From Diadema antillarum (taxonomy: Eukaryota), in NCBI RefSeq assembly GCF_040938485.1, contig NW_027271939.1, positions 62,001 through 126,000 of the forward strand: a stretch of DNA of 64,000 nucleotides, read 5' to 3'. Below, piece after piece: positions 381-49,059 of this stretch. How positions within the stretch are numbered: position 1 is the stretch's first letter; every line of letters begins with the position of its first letter. The notes under the pieces are model-generated. The model made no database searches. It worked only from the letters and a program-made list of their open reading frames with translations, and had not been told where the DNA came from. The position numbers and the translations under genes are program-made.

Positions 381-1160
381 CTTACGTTTTCCCAGACTCT
401 CTGTGCCTTCATATCCATCCCGTTTGAACATACAATCAAAGAAAAATACTTTTTTTTTTGGTCTTAATTACTCTAACTATACAAGGGGTCTAACATCTTC
501 GGTCTACCGGACCTTTGGCCTATCGGTGTGCAACAGTTGCAATTGTACTCTTAACAGTACTTATCTAAGTCATGAAATTTTCATTTTTGCTTGGCTTCTT
601 ATAGTTCTCAGATCTCTTTGCATACGCAGATACACCTTAGGGCCAACATATATAAAACAATAAGGAAAATAGATAACGAATGGGAAAAGAACGCATACTA
701 GGGGATATAGCAAATCCTTTGAAATACACATTAGGAGAACAAATCAAGTATACATGCTGCAGACAGAGTTGTTACTGGTAGTATAGAAATGTTGAAAGTT
801 TGGTAAAATAATGCGATTTGTGTATTATTTCAGAAAACTGCACAGTTGGGTCCTCAGAAGACAATATGGGGGAGGTAGTGGGAAAAGAAAGACATGAACA
901 TTATCCTATATATAATAAGTACCAAAGTCTTGCAGAAATGTGAGACTACGCAAAGATTGTGGGGACAGTATCAAAAACGGGTCATTTCTGCATGTGTTTT
1001 AGTATTGATTTGTAATTCTTTTTCCCTTTGCCCTGTCAAGTCGAAATGATAAAGTGCTCATCAATGTAAAGTGTTATGTTAGTCATCACACCTAATGTCT
1101 GTCTTTTTTCTACCCTATTTAACCTTTTATGGCGCTCCTTTTTTTTAAATCTCATTTTAG

Positions 1161-1812
1161 CTATGAAGGAATCAAGCAGGAACTAGAGTCTTCGACAAGC
1201 CGCACGGTAGTGGTCAAGGAAATGGCAGTCGCTATCCATGATTCCTATGATTATATTCCGTCGGGATTTCGTCACGTCATCTTTATTCGTGACCCACGGC
1301 GAGTGATACCGTCCTTTCGCAAGATGTTGCTGCATTATAAGGGAATGGATGCTGGTGATATCAGCTCGGATATGGAAGAAGTGCACGATGCGTACCCTAC
1401 CCTGCACTGGTATGGCGAGATGTATGCACTCTGGCAGTATATCCGGGAACACATCGACATAAACCCGCTGATCATCGACACGGAAGATTTCCTCGCCGAT
1501 CCTGCGACGTACCTGAGAAAGATCTGTGAGCTGATCGACGTCGAGTACAGCGACGACCTGCTTGAATGGGATCCTTCGATGGACGTTGTCAAAAAGTGGA
1601 AACAGGGTTGTATGGACGCTTACACGAACGGTACCCTTCCCAGTTCCCTGGCGTTCAAGAGGGCTTTCCACAGCTCCAAGTTTGCCCCCACGTCCAGTCC
1701 GATTCCGTCATTGGAAGATCTCACGCCTGATTGCGTCCGCATAATTGGTAAATGTCAGGCAATGTATGATGACATGTATCAGCATCGTCTAAAACCGAAA
1801 ATCTCTCAATAG
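1161..1812 (+). CDS. Terminal coding exon of a sulfotransferase-fold protein (type often annotated 'branched-chain-amino-acid aminotransferase-like'); 5' exons not identified
   Basis: Acceptor ctcattttag ends at 1160 and the frame is open to TAG at 1810-1812. Motifs VVKEMA, HVIFIRDPRRVIPSF (R-x-P..S PAPS 3'-phosphate-type motif), LIIDTEDFLADP and LLEW are present. GC is clearly above the flanks. Confidence 0.75.
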
Positions 1813-6718: not shown

Positions 6719-7765
6719 CTTTCCTGTAGCCATAGGCTATTCTCTTAAATCCTCAAATCTTTATCTTTTATTCACTTTGTTGCGATTATATCAACTTGTG
6801 TAAATGTGTATATCACCCTTGTGATGAACAGGAGTATGACAAATGCTGAACTTATGTTACCTATAGCGACGGCCCATAAAATGCGTCACTGCTGTCTTAT
6901 GTCTTATATCCTCTGCGGTTAGAAACTTATGAAATGTTTCCTCTCTCCCAGCAGTATACCCTACATCTCTTTCCTTTGATGATGATATATTCGTGAACGA
7001 AAATGTTCCTGCCAAGGCGTGTGAAGCATCTTGGTGCTCGAGAATACTCGTCTGTCTGTCTGTCTGTCTGTCCTCTGTCCATCCGCATATCTCCCACACT
7101 CTCTCTATGAATAGCTATATCTAGCGATCTATCTGTTTTTTTCGCATTATTGGACTCCCTTCTCACACACATCAAGTCTACTTTCTTTTCACATCTTTCT
7201 TGGCTTTGACCGATTCAAATACTCCAGTATTCATCGCTGGAGATTGATAAAAGTTAAAGAGATGTTTGAATATATTGACTCTACCCTTACATACATGTCA
7301 TTTGTTCAGCTGTCTGCGATATACACAAATATTTCAAACAAAAATGTTGAGTTAACATATTTTTTATTCAATGATTAAACATGATTTTTCGTTTCTTGGA
7401 AATGAGTCAACATGGAACGGAAGTAATTATACACTCATCGGCCCACTTTCCTTTTCACGTCATTACGCATACATTCGCAAAGAAACAGTTATTACAACGG
7501 CACTTCAAAACTACATTCATCTGATGCAAAGAATAACACAAGGATTAATTTTGTTCTCAATGCATTTAGACATCAAGGCAGATGTGGTTTCACATTATAT
7601 TTTAGTGGGAGATCAAACGCGACAGAAGAAAAACTTTTGACATACCAGCAACAGAAGAGTAGTAGAATCTAATGGGTCAAAAATGAGCCAACCAGCAGTT
7701 TATAATTTCCTGTTATACAGAACTCTGAGCACCTAAATTAGTTTCACGAAATTAAAAAAGAGTAC

Positions 7766-8742
7766 TTATGGCATGAAGTCTTCGTTGACATTGGGAAAGT
7801 CGGTTCCAAATTCATCGTTTTCACGTTCTCCCATCTGTGTCGTTGGGGCATCAGTTGACATTTCATCCTCATCACCTTCGGGTTTCTTGCCACCTCGACG
7901 ACCAAACGGACCACCGCGGTTACCATGACGACCATCCTTGCCCGGACGTTGGAAGGGATGACCATTTCCTCCTTCGCCACGTCGCCCACCATCCCGTCCA
8001 GATTGATCACGACGGTCCCATCGATCTGAGAAAACGTTTTCCTCTTCGGTACGATTACGTTTGCAGGGGTGGTGACGACGACGAGATGGTCTACCAAATG
8101 GTGCATTCTCGATGCGAGTGTCATTGTTGTCTCCTTCTCCATCATAGTCTTCGCTGTCGTTGCACTTTGCATGGTGATTTCGGCGGTTTCCATAGCGACC
8201 GAACCTGAAAGGGAAGATACTGGTACCGTTGTTATCTCCTTCTTTTGATTCCTCACTCTCATTACGCCTTCCATGGTGATGTTGATGATGGTCATGATGA
8301 TGATGGCGTGAGTGATGCCTTCCGTGGTGACGACCAGGAAAACTTTCTTCACCATCAGTTTCATTGGCTCTATCTGATCTCCTACCACCACCAAAAGGCA
8401 TCGGTGACATATCCCCTTCCGGTCCTCCTTGTCGACCTCCCTCTCGTCTTCCTCCCTGTCCAAAGAACGGTTTACCACCTCTCCGTCTGAAGTCCCCTTG
8501 TCCTCCAAACTCATCTCCTTCACCTCCCTCTATGCCTTGTCTCCCTTGGCCGTCTGAGAACTGTTCTCCTGGTCGAGAACGACCCTCATTCCTACGACCA
8601 CCATCTCGTCGTCCGCCTCCACGCTGCTCTAGATTAACCTCAGTCTGGCTGTCACCGGGTCCTCCACGGCCACCAGGACGATCAGAAGGTCGACCCCGCC
8701 CTGGTCGGTTTTCTTGTCTGCCACCACTTCTTTGAGCATGCG
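7766..8742 (-). CDS. Trf: Transformer (185/333) gene A, exon 2
   Basis: Acceptor tttcattacag (AG at 8744-8743), phase 1. Joins exon 1 to give ...TISAHAQRSGG..., with Gly/Arg-rich then His-rich regions and TAA at 7766-7768; 343 aa in total. Confidence 0.92.
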
Positions 8743-9265
8743 CTGTAATGAAAGAATCGATCGATTCCACTTAGAATGATTGCAGGTGCTTTTAACGTAA
8801 TTAGGCCAACATTGTTATCAGGAAAATCGACGACAGTCTCTGTATAGCAAGTAATATGCCTCATCAGCATGCTCCAAGTTCGTATTTGTGTGCATTCTTA
8901 CTAAGACCAAAAAAAAAATACAAACAAACAAGTTGTAACTTTTGTGTCGTTTAATGCCATCACTCAATTCCAATGCTGATTGTAAAATCTATCATATCTC
9001 ACGTTCTGTTATTCACGTCTGTCCATTTGATCTTTTCCTTCTGTACAATTTCTGAGGGTAGTATTTTTTCCTTCACTGTGCATTGAATCAAAAGCTCGAT
9101 CAATTGAATTCACTATCTCAGTTTGAAACTGCAGTGCTCATTCATCAAAATCAGAATTACTTCTGGACATGTGAATAACAAGGAGAAATGGAACTCATTC
9201 AAATCTCTCCATAAGCTATCATGATTATGACATCATTATGTAGATGAAGAACAGGTTTGTCTTAC

Positions 9266-9320
9266 CTGAAATGGTCAACACAGCGAGAGCAAAAATAAGT
9301 AGTGTTGATTTCCAACCCAT
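9266..9320 (-). CDS. Trf: Transformer gene A, exon 1 (signal peptide MGWKSTLLIFALAVLTIS)
   Basis: tcatcaccATGG start, 55 nt, donor G|GTAAGA. Same length and phase as the other five leaders. Confidence 0.9.
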
Positions 9321-9445
9321 GGTGATGAAATTGCCGCCTCCTAATCTGATATTTTGGTCGGTACAGATCCTGTCTCTCCCCGCTTCTATCTTTCTTCTTA
9401 TCGGAAGGTGAGCCCGATGTCTGATGGAAGTGGCATTTTCTTTCC

Positions 9446-9570
9446 CTTATATACATCTTGTCATGAAATGTAAGCATCTCTGGTGCCTGACAGTACCGTG
9501 CACGTCCCCAAAACAACCACATGTCAACATAGTGAGTTATATACATCCGGCCGTGTGAGGGAGCGCCTGA
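9446..9570 (-). promoter_or_regulatory. Trf A proximal promoter (TATA plus conserved upstream boxes)
   Basis: TATATAAG at 9453-9446. GGTACTGTCAGGCACC and CGCTCCCTCACACGGCCGGATGT are shared with the other Trf promoters. Confidence 0.55.
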
Positions 9571-9857
9571 CACTCATAGACTGAATAGGAACAATGGTCT
9601 CTCAGCAATGCATATGCATTTTTTTTTTTGGAATAATATCTATTCACTTCCAATCAAATAATACAAAAAAAAAAGAATCAATACACTTTGGTATTACTCT
9701 ACAAACATAAACGAATGATTCTTTTAAAGATAACTGAAATAGTTATACATTTTGATGTTTCACAATAAAACAAAATCATGAAATGGCAATAGTACAGCAA
9801 TTACCGAAGAATTAAGAATGGAAGTATATTACATTTATTTGCACAAGCGAGCAAATA

Positions 9858-9902
<45 letters not shown>

Positions 9903-10574
9903 ACATACGTGGATGTTTCATTTTTCAATTCAAAATCTACGAATTGCATTTTTACAAAGAGATGGGTAATTATTCATAAAAAAATGAACCATATTTGTGA
10001 TCATGCAACGTTTTGTTATCAACTCTATAGCGATGTTCAAACGATGGATGCAAAAGTTATACCTTTGAGAAACAAAACAGACCTTTCACACTATCATATT
10101 TTTGTAATCACTGCGTTATACTAATAGTTCTCCTATCGAAGGTGGCCCTTTTCTTAAATATTTCTGGCGTAAAAACCGTACTTTACTAAACTACTGTTTG
10201 AATTTATATTATAGTTTTTATCATAATTATCACTATCACACTATCATTATGATATTACCTTCCCGTGCTTGGTTGAAATATAACTCGGCCTCAAGACGCA
10301 GAGACATACGCATATGTTTGTTTGTTTGTTTGTTTGCTTTTATTTCTGCATTCAATCAGATGCAATTTGAATGCAAACTTCAAAAAGTACAAAGACAAAG
10401 AATAACAAGTGCAGTGAAATAAATCGATAACATTACATAAATAGATACACATAGGTGATTGCATTGAGCAATGTAGATACACAGAAACATAAAATAAGAT
10501 ATACAGTATTTTTCAGTAAACAACAGAGATAATTGAATGCAGGAGACCACCATCATAAGCGATTAAGCTTGAAA

Positions 10575-10715
10575 TGGATGGAGGCCTCAATATATGTATA
10601 TGCACATATGTATATGCATAATATATGTATATGTATATGCATAATATACATATACATATGCATATATGTATATGCACAATATATGTATATGCACATAATA
10701 TATGTATATGCACAT
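10575..10715. repeat. Degenerate (TATATGTATATGCACA)-type minisatellite between divergent genes A and B
   Basis: Repeated atatgtatatgcaca/ta units are visible directly. Confidence 0.8.
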
Positions 10716-11580
10716 AATAAATGATTATATAATTGTTTAAGATGAGATGTGGTTGATATGGCAACAATCTGTAACGTGGTCTTCACTTTTAGTTTTCATT
10801 GTATTCTGTGCTACATTTCTTGTGCTGATGTAGTAGTGCCTCATCGGAAATCTTTTATCCCCCGACAGCGAAAACGTCTGCTACCACCAGCTACCGGATT
10901 GGGGTTATACCGTTCTTATTGTCTTTATTTTAATACGTAAATGTCGAAAATCAGCTATTTGTTATTCAGTCACAGGGAAAAACAATTTTAGTCATAAGAG
11001 AAATGAATAACATGAAAAGTCTTCAAGAGAAATCATAACTTTTGATAGCTCATGAGAAATTTTCAAGTGTATGTGGAATACTATTTTCGCCACAAGAATA
11101 TCTACAGTGAACAATGTCATTGATAATCCCGTTAAGTATGTTGTTGTTGTTGATGTTGCTGCTGTTAAGTTTTTTTTTTTTTCAATTATGGAAGATAATA
11201 CCTGCCTAAGAGTTGGCAATACACGGCAATTACATAGCTGACTGGATGAACATTGATTAGATATCTTGTGCAGTTGACGATCACTCTGTTCTACTCTACT
11301 CTTAATCCAGATGGAATCCCATTTCTTTATTCAATTTTTCACTTATGAATTTCTGGTCATTGTCTCTTTGTTTGCGTTTATTTCGTTGTAGATGTATCAC
11401 AAACACTTAAATATTGAGAATACACTGTATAGCTGTACATAATGTATTACCCTTTCTTTTTGGTATATACTAGGCAATGGCAACAAGGACTACCAAAATT
11501 TTCTTAATTTCAGGGGATCAACAATGAACGGGTCAAAGACTTTCGGAACACGCCAAACAATAACAGTAGGCGGAGCGTAT

Positions 11581-11720
11581 CAGGCGTTCACCAACACAGG
11601 AGGATGTGGTGTCTAATACCAACGGAAAGCCAACTCACTGAGGTGCCGCGTGGTGGTACTGGTCGACCCGCTACTCCAGGCACAGGTTGGAACGACACAC
11701 CCGCTCAAAATGTATAAAAG
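11581..11720 (+). promoter_or_regulatory. Trf B proximal promoter
   Basis: TATAAAAG at 11713-11720. CAGGCGTTCACCAACACAGGAGGATGTGG aligns to the conserved box of gene A. Confidence 0.5.
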
Positions 11721-11851
11721 TCCACTGAAGTGCACTCAATAGGTTACATTCTTGGGTCTGTCCTAGCAACTATAGACAGAGGGGGAGAGAAAGAAAGGAG
11801 TCTAAAAGAGGAGGAATTGAAAAGTTTGGCAAGTGACGAATTTTCATCAAT

Positions 11852-11906
11852 ATGGGCTGGAAATCACTTCTTCTCATCCTTGTCGTTGCTGCTCTGGCTA
11901 TCTCAG
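11852..11906 (+). CDS. Trf: Transformer gene B, exon 1 (MGWKSLLLILVVAALAIS)
   Basis: 55-nt hydrophobic leader with donor G|GTAAGA at 11907. Confidence 0.9.
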
Positions 11907-12818
11907 GTAAGAATAATTTCATGTACTTAAATCCTTCCGTTTTCATCTAACTTTGCGCATATCATTATTTCCAAAGAACACTGAAATCAGAGTACACCTT
12001 AATAATCGTAAAAAGAGAGGTGCAAACACGACTCAAATTGCCAGTAGGGAGTGCCTATTATAAACATTGTTAATTACGTAGCTGCAATTGGCACATATTG
12101 AAAAGAATCTAAAGCTTTGCAAATTTCTTACTCATATTCAGGGAACAATTAGAGAATTTAGATGCAAACACATATTCCATATGTATCAGTTTCAGATATT
12201 TAGATTTAATCTGCTAAAAAAATAATAATAACTGGAATAGACATAAGTATATATTCAAAACTAATTCTTGTTATGCAAACAGTGTAGTAGCATTGGAAAT
12301 ATTTCATTTCTCTCTATTTGCTGTTGAATTTACTTAAGAAATGTGAAAATGACATTTATCTAATCTGTTCTTAGCATTTACACACATAGATTCTATTCAC
12401 TACTTTTTTTAAAGATTTTGTAAATCACTGTCAATTATCTAAATGGGAAAGTTAATTCGTCGTTCTCGTTCGTTAACTAACTAGAACTAAATAACGAGGA
12501 TATGATATTGAATGCAGTGTAAAACAATACCCATTTATCATCATGATTATGGTGATCTAACTCAAGGTAATTGGATCGTTGGATTTGTGTTTCTATACAC
12601 CACAATGGCAGTAATCTATGTGTTGAATAGCTCTTTAGGCCTACGTGTTGGGTCTGTATTTGAAATGTAAAAGAATACAAAACAAACACTCACTCCTTTG
12701 ATGAAATTGATATTTTTTAGTATCTACATAAAATCTCACTGTGCATATTCATACGCATCCCTGTGATGACATTTCAATTCAAAATAAATGAATTTCTTAA
12801 ATACATTATCCTTCCCAG

Positions 12819-24880: not shown

Positions 24881-25863
24881 TGTGTGCACAGAACGGTCGT
24901 CGGGGTTCGGACAATAGACGAGGGCGGGGTCGCCCCTCAGATCGTCCTGGGGGCCGTGGAGGACCCGGCGACAGCCAGACTGAGGCGAATCTAGAGCAGC
25001 GTGGAGGCGGACGACGAGATGGTGGTCGTAGGAATGAGGGTCGTTTTCGACCAGGAGAACAGTTCTCAGACGGTCAAGGGAGACAAGGCGTAGAGGGAGG
25101 TGAAGGAGATGAGTTTGGAGGACAAGGGGACTTCAGACGGAGAGGAGGTAAACCGTTCTTTGGACAGGGAGGAAGACGAGAGGGAGGTCGACAAGGAGGA
25201 CCGGAAGGGGATATGTCACCGATGCCTTTTGGTGGTGGTAGGGGATCTGATAGAGCGAATGAAACCGATGGTGATGAAGATTTCCCTGGTCGTCATCATG
25301 GAAGGCATCACTCACGCCACCACCACCATCACCATCATCAACATCACCATGGAAGGCGTAATGAGAGTGAGGAATCAGAAGAAGGAGATAACAACGGTAC
25401 CAGTGTCTTCCATTTCAGGTTCCGTCACCATGGAAGCCGTCGACATCACCATGCAAAGTGCAACGAGAGTGAAGACTATGATGGAGAAGGAGACAACAAT
25501 GACACTCGCATCGAAAATGCACCATTTGGTAGACCATCTCGTCGTCGTCATCATCCCTGCAAACGTAATCGTACCGAAGAGGAAAACGGCATCTCAGATC
25601 GATGGGACCGTCGTGATCAATCTAGACGTGACGGTGGGCGACGTGGCGAAGGAGAAAATGGTCATCCCTTCCAACGTCCAGGCAAGGATGGTCGTCATGG
25701 TAACCATGGTGGTCGTCCATTTGGTCGTCGAGGAGGCTGGAAACCCGAAGGCGACGAGGAGGACATGTCCACTACCACTGAGCCAACAACACAGACCGGA
25801 GAGCGTGAAATTGATGAATTCGGAACTGACTTACCCGAAATCAATGAAGGGTTCATGCCATGA
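24881..25863 (+). CDS. Trf: Transformer gene D, exon 2
   Basis: Acceptor ends at 24880. Carries two more His codons than gene C; 345 aa in total. Confidence 0.92.
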
Positions 25864-26439
25864 GGAAAGTGAATCGTTGTTCTTGTTCTTGCTGTTATTG
25901 TGTGGTTTTTTTTTCAGGCAATTCTTCCCTCTCTTTTCCATCAAAATCTTATCCAAGAAAGCACGCTTGATTGGTTCTCGCATTAATACAAATCTTGTTT
26001 CACGCCGTGATTTGCGGCTTGTATTTTCACGTGCACTCACAAACAAAAAGCAAAGACAGAAATGAAATAATGTTTCCTTTCACCTTGAGTACAATGATTT
26101 TCAAATATGTCGGTGGCTGATGAATACCTGTATATTTCTAAAATGTATAATAAATGTCATCATGTATAAAGAATCACATAGAGTGTAATTGTGAGTCATT
26201 TTCTAAGACGTTTTAGTATACCCTTGACATTAAGAGTGAAATAGAAGGAGACAAGAAGATGGTGATAAAAAGTGTCATCGACAACTTACACACAATCTTG
26301 TGTGTGGGACTGAGAGATGGACCGACTACAGAACATGTTACGGCCAAATTATCAAGAGAGAGAGATGCGAAGAGTGGAGGGAGGCTTTGAAGCCACGATA
26401 TAGATAGATAAATAGATCTAAACTGATGAAGACTAAACG

Positions 26440-26470
<31 letters not shown>

Positions 26471-26925
26471 TCGGTTCTCTTTTAAGGAAAAGTTACGAAG
26501 ACGCATATATACTTTTGTAAGGGAACTTCAGTTTTCCAAGACTAGCTTATTTTCGAAATCATTTTCAAATATTGTACTTGGGAATCAATATAATGATATG
26601 GAATTCGTATTCACAAAGAAACAAATATGTACAAACAAGGAAGAAATAGCAGCTAATTTTCACTTAATAATGCTGCGTGATCATATAAATTCCTGTATGC
26701 AAAAAAAAAAAATTATGTAAAGACTTGGAACCAGTCGCATGTATGCAAAAATCTCTTACAATCACAGAATGCATACATGCAAAGAACTCATTGCAAAAAG
26801 GGATGCAATTTAGTACACTCTACAACTCTAACACACAAACACACACGTATTTGTGATACATTGAAATGGATACGTTGAAACGGGTGAATGAATATATATG
26901 CATATATATATATATGTATATATAC

Positions 26926-26961
<36 letters not shown>

Positions 26962-27999
26962 TGGCAACAGTGTAAATATATGATAATAGTATGATATACT
27001 ATACCTCCACGGTAAAGGGTAAATAAAGGACCCTTTTTTCTTAATTATTTCAGGCTTTCAAATTCCAAGCCTTCATTATTCAAATTGATTGTGACTCATT
27101 CATAGGATGTACATGGATTTATGTATATGGCTGTGACTGTTATTGTGTATGACGTGTGTAATTCAACAACCAAAGTCTGTACACTTTTGCACTGCCAGGC
27201 CTCTTTATTCAACAAAAAAAAAAAAGAGATGATTTTTGACGATTATTTCCGACTTAATTTGTTTGTTATTTTGATGACGTCATGTAATACATGTATACAG
27301 TCAGATCATTGATAGAAGAGAATGAGAAATCTTTGAATTTTTGGGTATGAAGAATTTCTAGGGGGTTGTGGATCAATCAATAAAATATTATTTCATGATT
27401 TTTAGCTGTAATTATCCTGAGCTGATACAGAGGTAGCAGTAGTAGTATTAGTATCAACATTGTCCACCACTTTCCCAGTGTTACATTAGACATAGTCTTA
27501 GTAATAATGATAAAAACCATAGTAATGATTATGATAACGATGATTACTATAGCCATCAGTTTAAAACTGTTACCAGACAGTCGTATTCAGTTATTTATTT
27601 TTGACTATTAAATTCGTTAATCCATTAATGAAAAAGAAAAAAAAAACACACACGCAAAAATCCTCGTCGCTTTTTTGCTTCCGTTTTCTTCATTCTGCAT
27701 TTTATTTCTCCATGCATACAAGTCATATTCTGCCAGTTTTTACGACATTCACTATTCTTCTTTTATCTTCTTTTTTATTATGTGCCAACCAAACTAGTTC
27801 TCTATCTAAGAATCTACGTATACTATTATGAATTATATATTGGATTATTTATTCATAACACCATAACTCTGTTCTCGGCGGGTTTTGAGAGTTGTTGGGC
27901 TGATCGTCATACCAACCTGGCTCACTTCATTGTTTCTAATTTTTTCGGCGGAACAATTTACTGGTTCTAAAGCCTGGAGCTTCTTTCACGTTCTCATGA

Positions 28000-28370
28000 T
28001 TACTGACTTTGTTTCCAGGCCCACCATCCATAGAAACTTTGAAATAATAGCTCTCTACGTTTAACTGACTTCTTTAATGGTGACCGCAGGTGGGTCCCAA
28101 CCAAGTTTCCTGTGTATCACACGACAATTGATTAGAGCGCCCTCCATTCATCGGCGCTCTCCCGCTGTCGCGCGGGCAACTTTTAACTTTTCCTTTGACA
28201 TAATCAACCAATTAGGGCGCGCGTCTACTATAAGCGGTGAAAACACCATGAAAGATCAAAGTGGTGCAGTCCTAAGAAACCTGTTGTCACGCTCGCTTAC
28301 GCCCACCGATTTCAGAGCTGTAACCCTATTGGTCGGCGGCTCATCTCTTTTAATCATCATCGACCAATTA
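28000..28370. promoter_or_regulatory. CpG-rich double-CCAAT module, copy upstream of gene E
   Basis: CCAAT at 28208-28212 and ATTGG at 28328-28332. Diverged from the C/D copies elsewhere, but both boxes and their ~120-bp spacing are kept. Confidence 0.45.
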
Positions 28371-29000
28371 TCTCAAGAGGCGTGGTGTTTTAACTTCATA
28401 AGATAATGCAACTGCAACGTATCATTACATGGTCTATTACTAATTCACACTGGGCCGCAAATCTGTTCCTCGCAGCCTCTGGTCTAATTTCTTTTCCTTC
28501 TTTTTATCTCTTTGCCCAATTCAACTTTACTATGCCAAAGTGGCTTTTGACTCTCGCAGTTACTATTCTTCATGTATCAACGATTTTCTCATTTGTCTTT
28601 ATGATGGTTTAATTTTTTACTGTTCAGATACAGATGAGAAGATGGTGAAAATTGGACACGAGATGTAACTGTCGCATGAATTAATTTCTTTTGGATGGAA
28701 CATATTCCATTACACCCCAAACTTGCAAAAATTCTGTAGTTTGAATAAGAACATGCAAAGATATCCAAAATATGGTTCAGCATTTAGAAAGTTTTTACTA
28801 TTACCACGCACTTGGATTGTGAGGTGCATAACTCACAATAATTCATAAAAGTGTATAACAAAACAAAACAAAACAAAAGGTTGAAATGACTTTCAGGAAA
28901 TATAACTCAGTTCTTCTAGAAAAAAACAACCAACAACCCCGAAACAAAAATGGCATTTTGATTTGAGGCATTTCACTTACACCGAAGCATATCAATGTGA

Positions 29001-30727
29001 AGCGGGGTTCCCACTATCGTGCGATCTACTACGAACGCCACGATTGGACATTCGTAACTGATCGTGAAAGTTTTGTTGAACTCGTCTGAAATTTCACGTT
29101 TGGATACGAGGTTATACGAGTCAATACGTGTTGGTTTGCTTGGATGCGATATGGTCACGATTGGTCTTTTTCAAGCAATACGATCTGTCACGATCTGGTC
29201 TCCCGTTCAAATACGATCTGATAGGATTGTCCCAATTGAGTCCATGATTGAACCCGATCTACCACTATCGTTACGATCGGGATCCCCGATTTGGTGCGTG
29301 CAGCTACGTTCTGATACGTTCCAATACGAATACTGCGATCTAATGCGCGTTGTTGAGAAAAGATACGATGTCTTGCACGATCGGGATCAAAATCGACCCC
29401 CATTTAAGGTGCGATTAGACCCGAATGGGAACATTATAGTCAGACTGACCATGGATTTCATTGTTTCCTCAACTTCTGCAGAGTGATTAGGCCTACTATC
29501 CACAACCATTGATGATGGCAAGGGTTGACATATTGAGGATGATGAGAACGTGACCTTTGCAGTATTGCGAATGACGATTAGGCCTACATTATTCATAGAA
29601 AGGAAACATCATCTAGGCCAGCCACAACCTCAGATAGTCCCTCCTCTAATTTAACCTAAAGAAATTAATAGATTATTGAATCGACGTGCTCATTCCCCCC
29701 CCCCAAAAAAAAAGAAGAAAAAAACACGCAAGATCAGATCATTGCCCCATCTTCTCAAGAAAAAAAAAAAGATCAAGACAAATGTTTACACCTTTCTGTG
29801 ATATACATGAAGAAAATAATTGTGTATGATGAAATTGAAGCTAGAAAAGAGGATGGGATCTTTTTGAATTCTGACATAATATGTATTATATACGCTCAAT
29901 ATGAAAAAGTTGGCCGAACTGATAGCATTGCTTGTGTGTTTGATTTCATATTCGCATTGTATGTATCATATGCACCTTTATTTCAAAATGTCGTTATCTC
30001 ATGGGGTATTGAAAGTTTGGTTGGTTTGGCTTGATTTATTGTTTTATTTCACAGTGTTTAAAAAAACCCGACATACACACAACAGAAAGGTAACTCCCCT
30101 AAAACAATGTCACTTAAAAAAAAAGTCTTACGCAAAATAATTTCGCAGGGGTATTGCTACACTTATTGACTAACTTCTATGTGGAAGATAATGACAGTGA
30201 CCTTTATAGTCATGCACGAGTGACCTGACATCCGCGACAATGGTCACTTTTCAAAAGTCACAAAAGTTACTTTTTTGTGGGGTATGTTCAACATTCAGCT
30301 TCTGACAGATGTTTCAGTGGAGTTGTTATTTTATATTTCATTGTGGCACTCCTCCCTTATTCAACCTCGCGGAATGCAAAATATATACGACTTGCGAGTA
30401 AAATAAGGGCAAATGTGCAAAATAAGCAGAAGGAAAGTGAAAAAGTCGATCCCGATCAACACGATTAAGAAGGACGATTAGATACGATTTGCTGCGTTTT
30501 GATACGATCCAAGACAATCTGATGCGATGGTCACGATCAAAAATCTATTGTGTTAATCGTAGAAAATTTTTGAACCGTTCAAAAATTTTCTACGATTAAC
30601 GCGATTGCCACGATTGACCTCAAGATCTGATACAATCTATTACGATCTGATAAGATCACCACGATTGCTTCACACTTGAGACAACGATTTCAATAGTGGC
30701 GCCAATCGTGATAGTGGGAACCCCGCT
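29001..30727 (+). mobile_element. Non-autonomous PIF/Harbinger-like DNA transposon
   Basis: TIRs AGCGGGGTTCCCACTATC / GATAGTGGGAACCCCGCT with 3-bp flanks TGA/TAA. The paralogous empty site is at ~38270-38290 (caatatga|atatgttcagtcc). Subtermini are rich in CGAT/ACGAT. Confidence 0.75.
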
Positions 30728-30874
30728 TAAATAAGTTCAGTCCTTACAAGAATTAAACACTCGGACCAGGAAAACAAAGGAAAGATCGATTATTGCTCTT
30801 ATCTTTTATAAAATCCACTATCGTCAAGTTTGTCTGCAATTATCACATGTAATTTTCCTAGCTACCTACATAGG

Positions 30875-31100
30875 AAGTCATGACCATAAACTCAAGTATG
30901 TAATCCCAACCGCGACCATATGTGTTCATATTTTCCTCCCCCCCCCCCCCCCCACCAAGCTGTTAGAACCTGGAACCATCTGCCAGAACCTGTGGTCGAG
31001 ATAACCAACACATTAACATTCAGAGAGGCTGCTCTTCTAGTCATCCGAGTGATGCAGCCTCCTGTTGGGTCACACATGCTATAAGCAAAGATGCATTTTT
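30875..31100 (+). mobile_element. 3' fragment of a CR1/L2-type LINE ORF2
   Basis: Translates to GSHDHKLKYVIP...(F)P-QAVRTWNHLPEPVV across a poly-C run, resembling the conserved CR1/L2 C-terminal 'SFFPRxxRxWNxLP'. Confidence 0.55.
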
Positions 31101-31494
31101 TTTTTCATTGCACTATGCTCAGTCACTTTTATTGTACATTAGTGACATTTGAAATCATCCTGTTCACCATGTCACCTCTCACTGATGCACGACACTTCTA
31201 CCATCCCGGGATAGTTACAAGGAGCTGCTGAAAGGGATTACATACTTCAAGGTTCAATGATTGCTGTGGCAACAGGGTTTTCATTAAAGTAGAAATGGAG
31301 ATTTAGAACTTTAGTCCACGTCATTTTTTTGAAGAAAAAACATCTACATTTTGCGTAGTACATCTGATTGTAATGTTCTTACGGTTGTTTTATAAATGGT
31401 GTATACGGAACGAATCATCTTTAATTCGCTGTGTAAGCTATTAGTTGCATTATTTTGCTTATTGCAATTAATATTGCTATTGATAAGAACTATC

Positions 31495-31701
31495 ATTATT
31501 ACTACTATTCTCTTTATCATTATCATTATCATTATCATCATTGTCATCATTATCATCATCATAATTCTTGTTACTATGTTACTACTACTACTTCTACTAC
31601 CTACTAGTACTACTACTACTACTACTACTACTACTATACTACTAATACTATTGCTACTGCTAGTGGAAGTAGCATCAGAAGTAGTAGTGTGTAGTGTAGT
31701 G

Positions 31702-31732
<31 letters not shown>

Positions 31733-31738
31733 AGTAGT
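31495..31738. repeat. Compound triplet microsatellite (ATC/ATT, ACT, GTA)
   Basis: Direct reading. Homologous tracts lie at ~15400-15560, ~21240-21420, ~27430-27550 and ~38590-38810. Confidence 0.9.
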
Positions 31739-33141
31739 AGATCGTAGGATTATTGGCAGAGCTTTCAATGTCATAACTTTCATTTTATTTTGCAAGTAGG
31801 CAAAGAGTAAAAATTATCATTCAGATTGACTATATTATTCATACCGGTAATTTGAATTTTTCGCTTGGCACAAAAATCAGTTGACTAACGATTAAGCAAA
31901 TCTTTCACTTTTAAAAAGGCACGTTCATTTCACACTTTGAAAACAACAAACAACAAAAGCAAACAAACAAACAATAGTGCAAATGCAAAAAGTTGATGAG
32001 AAAGACTAGACATCTGAAGATGTATTTCCAGGGAGTAGAAATATGAGAATAATTGTGATGAAGTCGTTGACTTTTGTGGTTGTCGTTGGTTGTACCTTGC
32101 ACATACTATCGTGTGCAGATGTGATGTCACCCACAGGACAGGAAATGACGGATCCAATCTGTTTGATGTCAGCACGAGGGTAGACCATCTCTGCTGGCAG
32201 GTATCAGGGCCAGATAATAATTAGTTTGGTTTTATTTAACGCTGTGCGGTGATTAAAGAGTTCAAGAGTTAAGAGTAAAAAGGAATAGAGAGATACAAGA
32301 TAGACAGGCAGTCACACGGACAGGAAAAAAAAAACCAGAAGGAGCAATAATTTCCCCATAATCATTTTTGTATAGCGCGCTAAAATTTCGATAGTTATTA
32401 TGGTTTGTTGCGTTTAGTCTTTTAACATAAAATCTTTACGAGAATCGGAGCTTTGGCTTTCCCTTCAGTAATCGTTTTATTCCCTGTCCAAATTCATTAC
32501 AGATGAAGTAGATGCCTGTCAAAAGATAAGTCAGTCCTCTCTAAGAACAAACATAGTAGCAAATAAGCAAAGAAACAAACAATTAATCATAGAGATTAAT
32601 CAACCGTGAATGATATGATCTTCTTCCAGCCCCCCCCCTCCCACAACCACAGTGAAATATTAATGTAAAAGCTTTTATAATCTTATTCAAGTGTAACATA
32701 TATTTCATGATGATATTATGGTCGACAGAAAAGGAAACCACAAAATTAAACATGCAAATCAAATCTAAAAAGATGACTGTTACTAAAAAAAAGACACAAC
32801 AAAAATTTGAAAAACCGAAACGTAACATTGGTATAAATAACAAATTAAAGAGAGCATTTAGTTATTGTCATTACGTTTTCCTTGAACAAGTGTAAAATTG
32901 AAATTTACGTAACTTTTTTTTCTTCTCAATTTCATGAAACTTTCTCTCTTCTTTTGGCTCGATTCTACTTATTTTGATGAAGTCATCTGATGACAATGGA
33001 GTGGAATGCATTCCATACTTTAGGTTTGCCCATTTTCAATCCATTGAACATAATGGATGCCCGTATATGTCAAGTGTGTTATTTTGTTTTGTTTTGTTAC
33101 GCCCTGCTCATTATCCCCGATTCGCTGAACAATGTATCAAT

Positions 33142-33266
33142 CGCTGCCTCACACAGCCGGATATGCTGTGGAATAGAACAGGAAAGACATCTCATTGGAG
33201 TAACACCGGTGATTTGGTACTACCAGGAACCGATTGGGACGCTTTTCAGCCCAAAATGTATAAAAG
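33142..33266 (+). promoter_or_regulatory. Trf E proximal promoter
   Basis: CGCTGCCTCACACAGCCGGATATG, GGTACTACCAGGAACC and TATAAAAG (33259-33266). Confidence 0.6.
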
Positions 33267-33376
33267 TCGACCAAATTGTCTGTATTCCTCAGATTTCTCG
33301 GGTTCGTGCTTTCACGAAAGAAAACTCCAAAGCAACGACTATAAAGAAAACTTGTCAAGAGAGAGATTTTATCACC

Positions 33377-33431
33377 ATGGGTTGGAAATCAACTTTGCTC
33401 ATTCTCTTTCTCGCTGCACTTGCTGTCGCAG
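33377..33431 (+). CDS. Trf: Transformer gene E, exon 1 (MGWKSTLLILFLAALAVA)
   Basis: 55-nt leader with donor GTAAGA at 33432. Confidence 0.9.
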
Positions 33432-33946
33432 GTAAGAATGATATCTTTATTTTACATCAGTCCCTTCTTTTTTCATATTATATATTCTCTTTTGCATATT
33501 CAAAGATTATAATAAGAAAGCTTAGATGATATTTCAATATGGAAAGATCACGTGAGAAGGTAAAGATTACGCGACACTGAAATTCAAAACTAATAATCAG
33601 AATGGTGTATGTTTGATTCTCCGCGATTAATCACATCAGTGATGAAGAACTGCCTAGCACAAAAAAGGACTTTATTTCAAAGTTAACTATGTTGAAACTT
33701 TATATGGCAATGGAGTTTACCACTATAACCCGTATCTCCTCACGCTGGATATTGAAGTTGATTTGAAAACAAGTTGTGTCTATGTTTCTACAGGTGAAAC
33801 ACTTCTGTTTTCAATACCTTTTTCTTTAGCAATATTTGTCCTAATATCATAGTGATACTCAGACAATGATGCTATAAATATCATAACGATGACAAACATG
33901 GATTTTATTTATGATAAACACCTGTCTTTAAATGCTTCTTTCACAG

Positions 33947-34923
33947 TGTGCGCACAGAACGGTCGTCGGGATCCAGACAATAGACGAGGGCGGGGTCGCC
34001 CCTCTGACCGTCCTGGTGGCCGTGGAGGACCCGGTGACAGCCAGATTGAGGTTAATCTAGAGCAGCGTGGAGGCGGACGACGAGATGGTGGTCGTAGGAA
34101 TGAGGGACGTTCTCGACCAGGAGAACAGTTCTCAAACGGCCAAGGGAGACAAGGCGTAGAGGGAGGTGAAGGAAATGAGTTTGGAGGACAAGCGGGCTTC
34201 AGACGGAGAGGTGGTAAACCGTTCTTTGGACAGGGAGGAAGACGAGAGGGAGGTCGACAAGGAGGACCGGAAGGGGATATGTCACCGATGCCTTTTGGTG
34301 GTGGTAGGAGATCTGATAGAGTCAATGAAACTGATGGTGACGAAAGTTACCCTGGTCGTCACCACGGAAGGCATCACTCACACCACCGTCACCATCATCA
34401 ACATCACCATGGAAGGCGTAATGAGAGTGAGGAATCTGAAGAAGGAGAAAACAACGGTACCAGTATCTTCCCATTCAGGTTCGGTCGCCATGGAAACCGC
34501 CATCATCACCATACAAAGTGTAATGAGAGCGAAGACTATGATGGGGAAGGAGACAACAATGACACTAGCATCGAGAATGCACCATTTGGTAGACCATCTC
34601 GTCGTCGTCATCATCCATGCAAACGTAATCGTACTGAGGAGGAAAACGGCATCTCAGATCGATGGGACCGTCGTGATCAATCTGGACATGATGGTGGGCG
34701 ACGTGGCGAAGGAGAAAATGGTCATCCCTTCCAACGTCCAGGCAAGGATGGTCGTCATGGTAACCATGGTGGTCGTCCATTTGGTCGTCGAGGAGGCTGG
34801 AAACCCGAAGGCGACGAGGAGGACATGTCCACTACCATTGAGCCAACAACACAGCCCGGAGAGCGTGAAATTGATGAATTCGGAACTGACCTACCCGAAA
34901 TCAATGAAGGGTTCATGCCATGA
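33947..34923 (+). CDS. Trf: Transformer gene E, exon 2
   Basis: Acceptor ttctttcacag ends at 33946; 343 aa in total. Confidence 0.92.
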
Positions 34924-35490: not shown

Positions 35491-35530
<40 letters not shown>

Positions 35531-35895
35531 ATGTATGTTTGGTTCCTTTTGTAAAGGAAAAGTCACGAAGACGTATGTACTTTTGTAAGGGAACTTCAGT
35601 TTTGTAAGACAAGCTTATTTTCGAAATTATTTTCAAATATTGTACGTTGGAATCAAGACATGGTTAAAATGTACTTGTTACAAATAACAAATGACAGATG
35701 ACAATGGATATCTTAGCATGCTCTCAAAATGATACACCCAAACATAAATACCACATACATAATCATACATTTCGGAAAAGAAATCATTGCAAAAAGAGAT
35801 GCAATACAGTAACACTCTACAACTCTAGCACTCAAACACACACGTATTCATACAATGAAATGGATGAATAAATATGATATATGCGTGTGTGCAAG

Positions 35896-48076: not shown

Positions 48077-49059
48077 TGTGCGCACAGAACGGTCGTCGGG
48101 GACCAGACAATAGACGAGGGCGGGGTCGCCCCTCTGATCGTCCTGGTGGCCGTGGAGGACCCGGTGACAGCCACATTGAAGTTAATCTAGAACAGCGTGG
48201 AGGCGGACGACGAGATGGTGGTCGTAGGAATGAGGGATGTTTTTGAACAGGAGAACAGTTCTCAGATGGCCAAGGGAGACTAGGCGTAGAGGGAGGTGAA
48301 GGAGATGAGTTTGGAGGACAAGGTGGCTTCAGACGGAGAGGAGGTAAACCGTTCTTTGGACAGGGAGGAAGACGAGAGGGAGGTCGTCAAGGAGGACCAG
48401 AAGGGGATATGTCACCGATGCCTTTTGGTGGTGGTAGGAGATCTGATAGAGCCAATAAAACTGATGGTGACGAAAGTTTCCCTGGTCGTCACCAAGGAAG
48501 GCATCACTCAAGCCACCATCACCATCACCATCACCATCATCAACAACACCATGGAAGGCGTAATGAGAGTGAGGAATCTGAAGGAGATAACAACGGTACC
48601 AGTATCTTCTCATTCAGGTTCGGTCGCCATGGAAACCGCCGTCATCACCATGCAAAGTACAATGACAGCGAAGACTATGATGGGGAAGGAGACAACAATG
48701 ACACTCGCAATGAAAATGCACCATTTGGTAGACCATCTCGTCGTCGTCATCATCCCTGCAAACGTAATCGTACCGAAGATGAAAACGGCATCTCAGATCG
48801 ATGGGACCGTCGTGATCAATCTGGACGTGACGGTGGGCGACGTGGCGAAGGAGAAAGTGGTCATCCCTTCCAACGTCCAGGCAAGAGGGGTCGCCATGGT
48901 AACCGAGGTGCTAGTCCATTTGGTCGTCGAGGAGACTGGAAACCCGAAGGCGACGAGGTGGACATGTCCACCACTGACTCAACAACACAGCCCGGAGAGC
49001 GTGAAATTGATGAATTCGGAACTGACTTACCCGAAATCAATGAAGGGTTCATGCCATGA
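48077..49059 (+). pseudogene. Trf: Transformer gene F, exon 2 with premature stop
   Basis: Acceptor ttttacag ends at 48076. In-frame TGA at 48244-48246 where paralogs have CGA or CTA. The rest stays in frame to the normal TGA at 49057-49059. Confidence 0.88.

What the first reader, a model, noticed from the sequence alone, without database searches (positions are those of the whole stretch)
7766..34923. Homogenisation confined to the exon-2 core while introns and leaders diverge
The introns of A (523 nt), B (912 nt) and C/D/E (515-522 nt) cannot be aligned by eye, and F's (607 nt without the LINE) aligns only partly. Leaders and the first ~10 codons of exon 2 also differ. From 'GRGRPSDRPGG' to 'KPEGD' the copies are nearly identical, including synonymous positions and including inverted gene A (seen). 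Purifying selection alone does not preserve synonymous sites. Recurrent ectopic gene conversion with sharp boundaries inside one exon is the simplest reading (inference), suggesting a targeted sequence-exchange zone.
Basis: partly seen in the sequence, partly recalled or inferred. Interest (0 to 1): 0.7.

Follow-up and report, generated by a model that had tools for sequence, protein, structure and literature searches.

The report
Exon-limited gene conversion, urchin cluster
Six neighbouring sea-urchin (Diadema antillarum) genes for a secreted, disordered Gly/Arg/His-rich protein swap the middle of their second exon by ordinary homology-dependent gene conversion, so the old gene lineages stay alike there while introns and gene ends have drifted apart; it is a clear case of a known process.

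Summary
The window is from Diadema antillarum and carries six two-exon genes (A inverted, B-F; F is a pseudogene).

A and B are old lineages with positional orthologues in D. setosum. Against C-F:
- exon 1 is 67-75% identical;
- introns score near shuffled sequence;
- the first 41 nt of exon 2 have dS above 1.

From exon-2 nt 42 to about nt 870 all copies are 92-96% identical (dS 0.09-0.20), so they are similar but not "nearly identical".

Orthologue comparison shows that core synonymous sites evolve at about the intron rate (A-SetA core dS 0.12; intron 86-88% identical). Constraint on synonymous sites therefore cannot explain the pattern.

Evidence for exchange:
- PHI and run tests are significant.
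- The two haplotype alleles of B differ at 5 of 912 intron sites but at 34 exon-2 sites, in blocks identical to other paralogues.

Gene conversion is supported. A targeted exchange zone is not:
- C-type copies also recombine in introns and flanks.
- B's similarity runs past its stop codon.
- A's core has stayed orthologous since the species split.

No sequence relative was found outside Diadema. The genes resemble the SpTransformer (Sp185/333) family in architecture only.

The parts
7766..9320 (-). Gene A (inverted). Exon 1 is 9320-9266, the intron 9265-8743 (523 nt) and exon 2 8742-7766. The low-divergence core is 8701-7871.
   Evidence: Positional orthologue SetA in D. setosum.
11852..13795 (+). 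Gene B. Exon 1 is 11852-11906, the intron 11907-12818 (912 nt) and exon 2 12819-13795. The core is 12860-13687.
   Evidence: Orthologue SetB has an 878-nt intron.
13169..13344 (+). Recent conversion tract inside B exon 2 (nt 351-526). It is identical to C-type copy h4 (0/188 columns) and 3/188 from E. It differs 15/188 from its own allele h2 and 19/188 from orthologue SetB.
   Evidence: (run test p 2e-5, Bonferroni 0.002).
18351..19904 (+). Gene C. Exon 1 is 18351-18405, the intron is 522 nt and exon 2 is 18928-19904. The core is 18969-19796.
24310..25863 (+). Gene D. Exon 1 is 24310-24364, the intron is 516 nt and exon 2 is 24881-25863. The core is 24922-25755.
33377..34923 (+). Gene E. Exon 1 is 33377-33431, the intron is 515 nt and exon 2 is 33947-34923. 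The core is 33988-34815.
40752..49059 (+). Pseudogene F. Exon 1 is 40752-40806. The intron is 7270 nt and carries a minus-strand LINE (ORFs 41039-44835 and 46893-47504). Exon 2 is 48077-49059 with an in-frame TGA at 48244-48246. The core is 48118-48954.
20481..20537 (.). (TG)n microsatellite about 575 nt 3' of C's stop codon. Equivalent arrays lie at 26439-26470 (D) and 35492-35538 (E). Homology between C-type units ends at these arrays.
14563..21501 (.). Segment holding one gene (C) in this haplotype. The other haplotype contig (C249:321943-350900) holds four genes here, giving 6 against 9 copies.

Best explanation
The window holds a tandem cluster of a gene family seen only in Diadema. The genes encode secreted, strongly hydrophilic (probably disordered) proteins with 21% Gly, 16% Arg and 6-8% His.

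The A, B and C-type gene lineages are much older than the D. antillarum / D. setosum split. The middle about 830 nt of exon 2 has been repeatedly overwritten between paralogues by ordinary homology-dependent interlocus gene conversion, together with unequal crossing-over among the younger C-type units.

Conversion tracts must start and end in similar sequence, so they cannot enter the already diverged exon 1, intron, first 41 nt of exon 2, or A's tail and 3' flank. Those parts keep diverging and the edge of similarity stays sharp.

Shown here: the discontinuity, the near-neutral rate at core synonymous sites, recombination signals, and tracts of about 70-190 nt that differ between alleles.

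Inferred: the mechanism (meiotic or mitotic germline conversion), and that the limits are passive rather than signalled.

For A the last homogenisation predates the species split. For B and the G/H copies exchange is recent. There it makes alleles differ more in exon 2 than in the intron, so it homogenises paralogues while diversifying alleles.
For: 1. Size of the discontinuity.
- Exon-2 identity of A/B to C-F is 89-92%, against exon 1 at 67-75% and introns near shuffled scores.
- Core dS is 0.13-0.20, against head dS above 1 and A-tail dS of 0.75-0.9.

2. Orthologue comparison. D. setosum locus L031 is collinear with the window.
- A-SetA: intron 86-88% identical, core dS 0.119, head dS 0.13. 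Core synonymous sites therefore run at about the neutral rate.
- Core GC3 is 0.34, the same as intron GC of 0.28-0.35.

3. Paralogue against orthologue differences.
- A core: 55 differences to C against 31 to SetA. A head plus tail: 46 against 3 (Fisher p 7e-5).
- B core: 53 to C against 70 to its orthologue SetB. B head: 17 against 5 (p 0.005).
- Tree path lengths give A-to-others over A-to-SetA of about 8 in the 5' part and about 2 in the core.

4. Recombination tests.
- PHI for the six genes is 0.353 against a null of 0.472 +/- 0.027, p<=0.0005, with a minimum recombination count (Rm) of 15.
- Run test: the B-h4 188-nt fragment has p 2e-5 (Bonferroni 0.002); hG-hH has Bonferroni p 0.013.

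5. Alleles B and h2.
- Mismatches are 2/500 upstream, 0/55 in exon 1, 5/912 in the intron and 34 plus 27 gap positions in exon 2 (Fisher p 1e-8).
- The first 320 nt of exon 2 are identical, and the differing sites match other paralogues in blocks.

6. Exchange is not exon-specific. Among C-type copies PHI is significant in the 5' flank plus intron (Rm 12) and in the 3' flank (Rm 9).

7. The haplotypes carry 6 against 9 genes. PMC13511894 states that this 1.75-Gb assembly keeps both haplotypes.
Against: - The AU test does not reject a B+h2+SetB clade in the core (p 0.19), so topological incongruence is weak. Most of the tree signal is in branch lengths.
- A's core is still a clade with SetA (97/95), so for A a single old event would be enough.
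- There is no GC-biased-conversion signature.
- A and B share the same 5' limit (nt 41-42) in both species. A passive model explains this only if the limit was set before the A/B tracts were last renewed, or if the head is protected by selection.
- h2 has about 8 private exon-2 substitutions with no sampled donor.
- No de novo conversion event was observed directly.
Confidence: 0.8

Rival explanations
1. One ancient replacement only. A single event shortly before the Diadema species split (a long conversion or a chimeric unequal crossover) gave A and B their present cores. Nothing has been exchanged since, and the mosaic signals are noise or parallel mutation.
For: A, hA and SetA form a core clade (97/95). 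Core dS is nearly flat, 0.11-0.19 for orthologues and paralogues alike. The AU test does not reject B-type monophyly.
Against: Alleles B and h2 differ 7-fold more in exon 2 than in the intron, in blocks identical to other paralogues. The run tests survive Bonferroni correction. B's core is closer to paralogue C (53 differences) than to orthologue SetB (70). SetB groups with SetC (95/90).
Confidence: 0.08
2. A targeted or programmed exchange zone. Specific signals at exon-2 nt about 41 and near KPEGD, for example the G-rich near-palindrome that starts the core, recruit or stop the recombination machinery so that only the core is exchanged.
For: The 5' change point is the same in A and B and in both species (nt 41-42). 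It sits at a GGGGCG..CGCCCC inverted repeat in B-F and SetA, which I read directly from the alignment. Pairwise incompatibility among informative sites is about 5-fold higher in exon 2 than in the 5' flank plus intron of C-type copies.
Against: B's similarity runs through the stop codon and about 320 nt further. A's 3' limit is graded, not sharp. C-type copies also recombine in introns and flanks. The inverted repeat is broken in A itself. Higher reticulation in exon 2 is expected because only there do all family members offer homologous donors.
Confidence: 0.06
3. No exchange. The core is similar because synonymous sites are constrained (RNA structure, codon use, low mutation rate), or because head, tail and intron mutate unusually fast.
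For: The low-divergence core is seen family-wide, even in unlinked copies (c268 and c299 core dS 0.24-0.28).
Against: Between orthologues the core evolves as fast as or faster than head and tail (A-SetA core dS 0.119, head 0.13, tail 0.05) and about as fast as the intron. GC3 equals background. PHI and the run tests detect mosaicism.
Confidence: 0.03
4. Assembly artefact. Mosaic exon-2 sequences arose from mis-joined reads in a multi-copy region.
For: Short-read Logan contigs shatter across exon 2. The assembly is uncollapsed (PMC13511894).
Against: The assembly is HiFi-based, with mean reads of 6.8 kb that are longer than a gene (bioRxiv 10.64898/2026.05.24.727502). The same head/core/tail structure is present in the independent D. 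setosum assembly. D/h7, E/h8 and F/h9F are identical between the contigs.
Confidence: 0.02

Closest known systems
SpTransformer (Sp185/333) gene clusters of Strongylocentrotus purpuratus (PMC5491942, PMC8634487, PMC3091723)
   Same: - Genes under 2 kb with two exons. Exon 1 encodes an 18-19-aa hydrophobic leader and exon 2 the whole mature protein.
- A Gly-rich N-terminal part, a His-rich patch and a separate C-terminal part.
- Tight clusters with a peripheral gene inverted, and microsatellites beside the genes.
- Allelic clusters with different gene numbers.
- Introns more diverse than exons and falling into types.
- Significant recombination between leader, intron and parts of exon 2, with gene conversion proposed.
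- The language-model feature search puts 'Sp185/333' and '185/333' clusters first, at 0.80 and 0.76, which is a lead only.
   Different: - No detectable sequence similarity. An HMMER profile search of 1.84 billion representatives and a word search at E<=10 find only Diadema proteins.
- No presence/absence mosaic of elements: all cluster copies are 324-326 aa.
- No RGD motif in the five intact genes.
- The microsatellites are (TG)n, not GA/GAT.
- Trf genes are so far reported only from Camarodonta.
- Immune expression was not tested.
Concerted evolution by interlocus gene conversion with tract limits, for example the human fetal gamma-globin pair bounded by a (TG)n repeat, and the theory of sequence-dependent conversion and escape from it (Slightom 1980; Walsh 1987; Teshima and Innan 2004; cited from memory, not checked here)
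   Same: - Paralogue similarity is confined to a block with abrupt edges, and the flanks are much older.
- Conversion requires homology, so diverged flanks are excluded.
- Simple repeats lie at the ends of the homology units.
   Different: - Here many donors, including unlinked copies, share one core.
- One limit lies inside a coding exon rather than at a repeat.
- Conversion visibly diversifies alleles.
MHC class II B exon 2 and similar immune genes in which short conversion tracts shuffle variation (for example PMC3720538, title and abstract only)
   Same: Short tracts exchanged among paralogues within one exon raise allelic diversity, while the introns keep the locus identity.
   Different: The protein family is unrelated, there is no evidence here of balancing selection, and function is unknown.

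Membership tests
Interlocus gene conversion / concerted evolution | Paralogue divergence in the tract is far below that of the flanks, relative to an orthologue comparison | tested here: met
   A differs from C at 55 core sites and from SetA at 31. In head plus tail the counts are 46 and 3, p 7e-5.
Interlocus gene conversion / concerted evolution | Mosaic ancestry inside the tract (site incompatibility, unusually long identical fragments) | tested here: met
   PHI p<=0.0005 and Rm 15 for six genes. The B-h4 188-nt fragment has Bonferroni p 0.002.
Interlocus gene conversion / concerted evolution | Paralogues within a species are closer than orthologues between species | tested here: inconclusive
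   Met for B (53 to C against 70 to SetB; SetB+SetC 95/90). Not met for A (clade with SetA, 97/95). AU test p 0.19.
Interlocus gene conversion / concerted evolution | Allelic differences clustered in blocks that match a paralogous donor | tested here: met
   B and h2: 5/912 in the intron against 34 plus 27 gap positions in exon 2. In the tract at 13169-13344, B-h4 is 0/188 and B-h2 is 15/188.
Interlocus gene conversion / concerted evolution | GC-biased signature at silent sites (frequent, not obligatory) | tested here: not met
   Core GC3 is 0.33-0.36 and intron GC is 0.28-0.35.
Trf (Sp185/333) family | Small two-exon gene with the leader in exon 1 and the mature protein in exon 2 | tested here: met
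   Splice model agrees with P0001 and P0002.
Trf (Sp185/333) family | Sequence homology to Sp/He/LvTrf proteins | tested here: inconclusive
   No hit outside Diadema by HMMER profile or word search at E<=10. The feature search ranks Sp185/333 clusters first but below the 0.9 trust level. No Trf sequence could be obtained for a direct profile comparison.
Trf (Sp185/333) family | Gly-rich region, RGD motif, His-rich region, C-terminal region | tested here: inconclusive
   Gly 21%, a His patch and an acidic C-terminus are present. RGD is absent from A-E and present only in F and the c268 type.
Trf (Sp185/333) family | Mosaic element patterns (elements present or absent) in exon 2 | tested here: not met
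   All cluster copies are 324-326 aa with only small indels. Distant paralogues do carry a repeated block, 4 copies.
Trf (Sp185/333) family | Tight clusters flanked by short tandem repeats, with allelic gene-number differences | tested here: met
   Spacing is about 6 kb. (TG)n arrays lie at the unit ends. There are 6 against 9 genes.
Trf (Sp185/333) family | Immune-induced expression in phagocytes | not testable with these tools
   Only contig-level runs were available and no spliced joint was seen.

The most novel reading that the evidence does not exclude
The Diadema family is a very diverged homologue of the Trf (Sp185/333) immune effectors. That would place the family at the base of the euechinoids rather than only in Camarodonta. 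Germline conversion among paralogues would then be its conserved way of generating allelic diversity in the mature-protein exon, while leader and intron keep locus identity.
Probability: 0.3. Interest if true: 0.6.

Novelty: new member of a known kind. Interest (0 to 1): 0.45.

Why it matters
This is an unusually clean natural case of conversion limited to part of one exon. Three independent comparisons are available: two haplotypes of one animal, a second species with positional orthologues, and unlinked copies. It also shows that the same exchange that keeps old paralogues alike makes alleles differ. The gene family has not been described in the papers searched. It has the architecture of the sea-urchin Trf immune effectors, in a species hit by repeated mass mortality. 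The process itself is well known.

Tried and rejected
- Pfam scan of exon 2: no family.
I used the own-genome search instead.
- AU test for incongruent topology: not significant.
- GC-biased-conversion signature: absent.
- Sequencing runs: only Logan contigs were available, fragmented over exon 2. There was no spliced joint and no usable expression evidence.
- Homology to SpTrf: the profile search and word search were blank outside Diadema. The Atlas hit is only a lead.
- BLASTP self-comparison of protein C reported no internal repeat. I saw the two NESE..NN.T..PFG.. blocks by eye only.
- I considered and rejected synonymous constraint, hypermutating head or tail, and mis-assembly (see rivals).
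- Spliced proteins were never joined.
- The N run at 38676-38805 was left untouched.
Full report
**Source and gene models.** The window is G000:C1051:62001-126000. The genome is the uncollapsed 1.75-Gb Diadema antillarum assembly. Contig C249 has the length (835,719 bp) of the contig that carries the D. antillarum protein P0001. PMC13511894 describes a 1.75-Gb, 2,964-contig assembly that retains both haplotypes.

Six paralogous genes are present: A (minus strand) and B-F (plus strand).
- Each has a 55-nt first coding exon encoding MGWKS... plus a hydrophobic leader, ending CAG|GTAAG in phase 1.
- Each has a 977-983-nt second exon.
- NCBI models P0001 and P0002 use the same junction.
- F has an in-frame TGA at 48244-48246 and a LINE in its intron.
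- The mature proteins are 21% Gly, 16% Arg and 6-8% His, with GRAVY about -1.9 and six N-glycosylation sequons.
- Pfam finds nothing.

**Checking the observation.**
- A and B against C-F: exon 1 is 67-75% identical, intron alignments score near shuffled controls, and A's 3' flank is unalignable.
- Exon 2 of A/B against C-F is 89-92% identical.
- C-F align with each other throughout (introns 86-98%).

| Part of exon 2 | dS (Nei-Gojobori), A/B against C-F |
|---|---|
| Core (GRGRPSDRPGG to KPEGD) | 0.13-0.20 |
| First 13 codons | above 1 |
| A's tail | 0.75-0.9 |

C-F among themselves have core dS of 0.09-0.15. Core nucleotide identity is 92.1-96.3%, so "nearly identical" overstates it.

The 5' change point is at exon-2 nt 41-42 for both A and B and for their D. 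setosum orthologues. A's 3' limit is graded, at about nt 794-870. B remains alignable through its stop codon and about 320 nt beyond.

**Is the core similar because silent sites are constrained?** D. setosum locus L031 carries a minus/plus/plus trio that is collinear with window 3-20 kb. Its exon 1, head and tail sequences identify it as orthologues of A, B and a C-type gene.
- For A-SetA the intron is 86-88% identical, the upstream 500 nt are 88.6% identical, core dS is 0.119, head dS 0.13 and tail dS 0.05.
- Core synonymous sites therefore evolve at about the intron rate, and head and tail are not fast-evolving.
- Core GC3 (0.34) equals intron GC.

The large head, tail and intron divergence between lineages is therefore real age, and the small core divergence is recent shared ancestry. 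Counts of differences show this directly.
- A: in the core, 55 differences to C against 31 to SetA. In head plus tail, 46 against 3 (p 7e-5).
- B: in the core, 53 to C against 70 to its own orthologue. In the head, 17 against 5 (p 0.005).
- In trees, the ratio of A-to-paralogue over A-to-orthologue path length is about 8 in the 5' part and about 2 in the core.

**Direct signs of exchange.**
- PHI is significant for the six genes: 0.353 against 0.472 +/- 0.027, p<=0.0005, with a minimum recombination count (Rm) of 15. It is also significant for 15-23 copies.
- A GENECONV-style run test gives a 188-nt B-h4 fragment at p 2e-5 (Bonferroni 0.002) and hG-hH at Bonferroni 0.013.

The clearest evidence comes from the two haplotypes. 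Window 1-14563 matches C249 at 95-97%, and window 21501-55613 matches it at 99.3-99.9%. The alleles B and h2 compare as follows.

| Segment | B against h2 |
|---|---|
| Upstream 500 nt | 2 mismatches |
| Exon 1 (55 nt) | 0 mismatches |
| Intron (912 nt) | 5 mismatches |
| Exon 2, first 320 nt | identical |
| Exon 2, whole | 34 mismatches plus 27 gap positions |

Fisher's test for exon 2 against the 5' segments gives p 1e-8.

In window 13169-13344, B is identical to the C-type copy h4 (0/188) and 3/188 from E. It is 15/188 from h2 and 19/188 from SetB. Over the same interval h2 is 2/188 from the G-type copy wG. In the next 73 columns h2 matches C-type copies, while B matches A. These are short tracts (about 70-190 nt) from different donors. 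wG/hG and wH/hH show the same excess of exon-2 differences.

**What is not supported.**
- A's core still forms a clade with SetA (97/95), so A has not been re-homogenised since the species split.
- The AU test does not reject B-type monophyly in the core (p 0.19).
- Among C-type copies recombination is also significant in the 5' flank plus intron (Rm 12) and the 3' flank (Rm 9). Pairwise incompatibility is about 5-fold higher in exon 2. That is expected if only exon 2 has donors throughout the family.
- Inter-unit homology of C-type units ends at a (TG)n array about 575 nt past each stop codon.
- One haplotype has one gene where the other has four, which implies unequal crossing-over.

I therefore read the sharp limits as a passive result of homology-dependent conversion next to old, diverged sequence. 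I do not read them as a targeted zone. The shared nt 41-42 limit, which sits next to a G-rich inverted repeat, remains the best argument for the rival reading.

**What family is this?**
- Word search finds only "uncharacterized protein" entries of D. antillarum and D. setosum.
- An HMMER profile of ten members, searched against 1.84 billion representatives, finds two proteins, both from D. antillarum.
- The own genome holds at least 24 closely related copies plus more distant paralogues, some with a block repeated four times.
- The architecture matches the SpTransformer (Sp185/333) family as described in PMC5491942 and PMC8634487. That literature reports recombination between leader, intron and exon-2 parts, introns more diverse than exons, and allelic clusters with different gene numbers.
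- A language-model feature search ranks Sp185/333 clusters first and second, but at 0.80 and 0.76, below the level at which such hits can be trusted.

Membership is therefore open. The resemblance is in how the locus works.

**Limits of this work.**
- No expression evidence could be obtained.
- Spliced products were not joined, and exon 2 was searched by reference.
- The masked N run at 38676-38805 was not touched.
- The gamma-globin and conversion-theory papers are cited from memory.

**Verdict.** This is a real and well-supported case of exon-limited interlocus gene conversion in an undescribed, Trf-like sea-urchin gene cluster. The kind of process is known, and the "targeted zone" reading is not needed.

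Noticed in passing
window 14563-21501 vs G000:C249:321943-350900: The haplotypes differ in gene number. This contig has one gene (C) where the other has four (h3-h6), giving 6 against 9 cluster genes. From D onward the two contigs are 99.3-99.9% identical.
   Followed up: partly
window 7266-7765 (3' of gene A, minus strand): The 500 nt after A's stop codon are 98% identical to D. setosum. A's intron is only 86-88% identical and B's 3' flank 82%. This is an unusually conserved 3' UTR or flank of unknown role.
   Followed up: no
window 20481-20537, 26439-26470, 35492-35538, 14658-14703: (TG)n microsatellites lie about 570-580 nt after the stop codons of C, D and E, and about 860 nt after B's. 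Alignments between C-type units stop at these arrays. This recalls the repeat-bounded units of SpTrf clusters.
   Followed up: partly
window 40807-48076: F's intron holds a minus-strand LINE with long open frames (529 and 738 aa, 41039-44835; a further 203-aa ORF at 46893-47504). Of the original intron only about 130 nt at the 3' end and a 35-nt patch still align with C-E.
   Followed up: partly
G000:C1051:139574-140530(-) and 146154-147122(+), L020 and L018: Two more family genes (G inverted, H) lie 14-20 kb past the window end. Their tails are strongly diverged (dS about 1-1.9) but their cores are homogenised (dS 0.17-0.19). The alleles wG and hG differ at 4 of 55 exon-1 sites while the intron is 99.2% identical.
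   Followed up: partly
L026 (G000:C1051:50935-54471) and L029 (C1051:30330-33812): Distant paralogues lie upstream of the window. One is a 446-aa frame with a block of about 40 aa (CNESGES..NNGT..FPF..) repeated four times. The other is a 302-aa frame with a long His run.
   Followed up: no
window 18963-18985 and equivalents: The core begins at a G-rich inverted repeat (GGGGCG, 4 nt, CGCCCC) that covers the GRGRP codons. It is intact in B-F and SetA and broken in A.
   Followed up: no
window 1129-1812: An ORF of 227 aa gives a weak sulfotransferase match (PF13469, E 3e-6). It is probably an exon of a neighbouring gene.
   Followed up: no
G000:C808:1106839, C299:1805729, C268:577197 / C663:652171: Unlinked family copies on other contigs still share the low-divergence core (dS 0.24-0.28), while the c268 tail is saturated. 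Exchange, or its legacy, therefore reaches beyond this cluster.
   Followed up: partly
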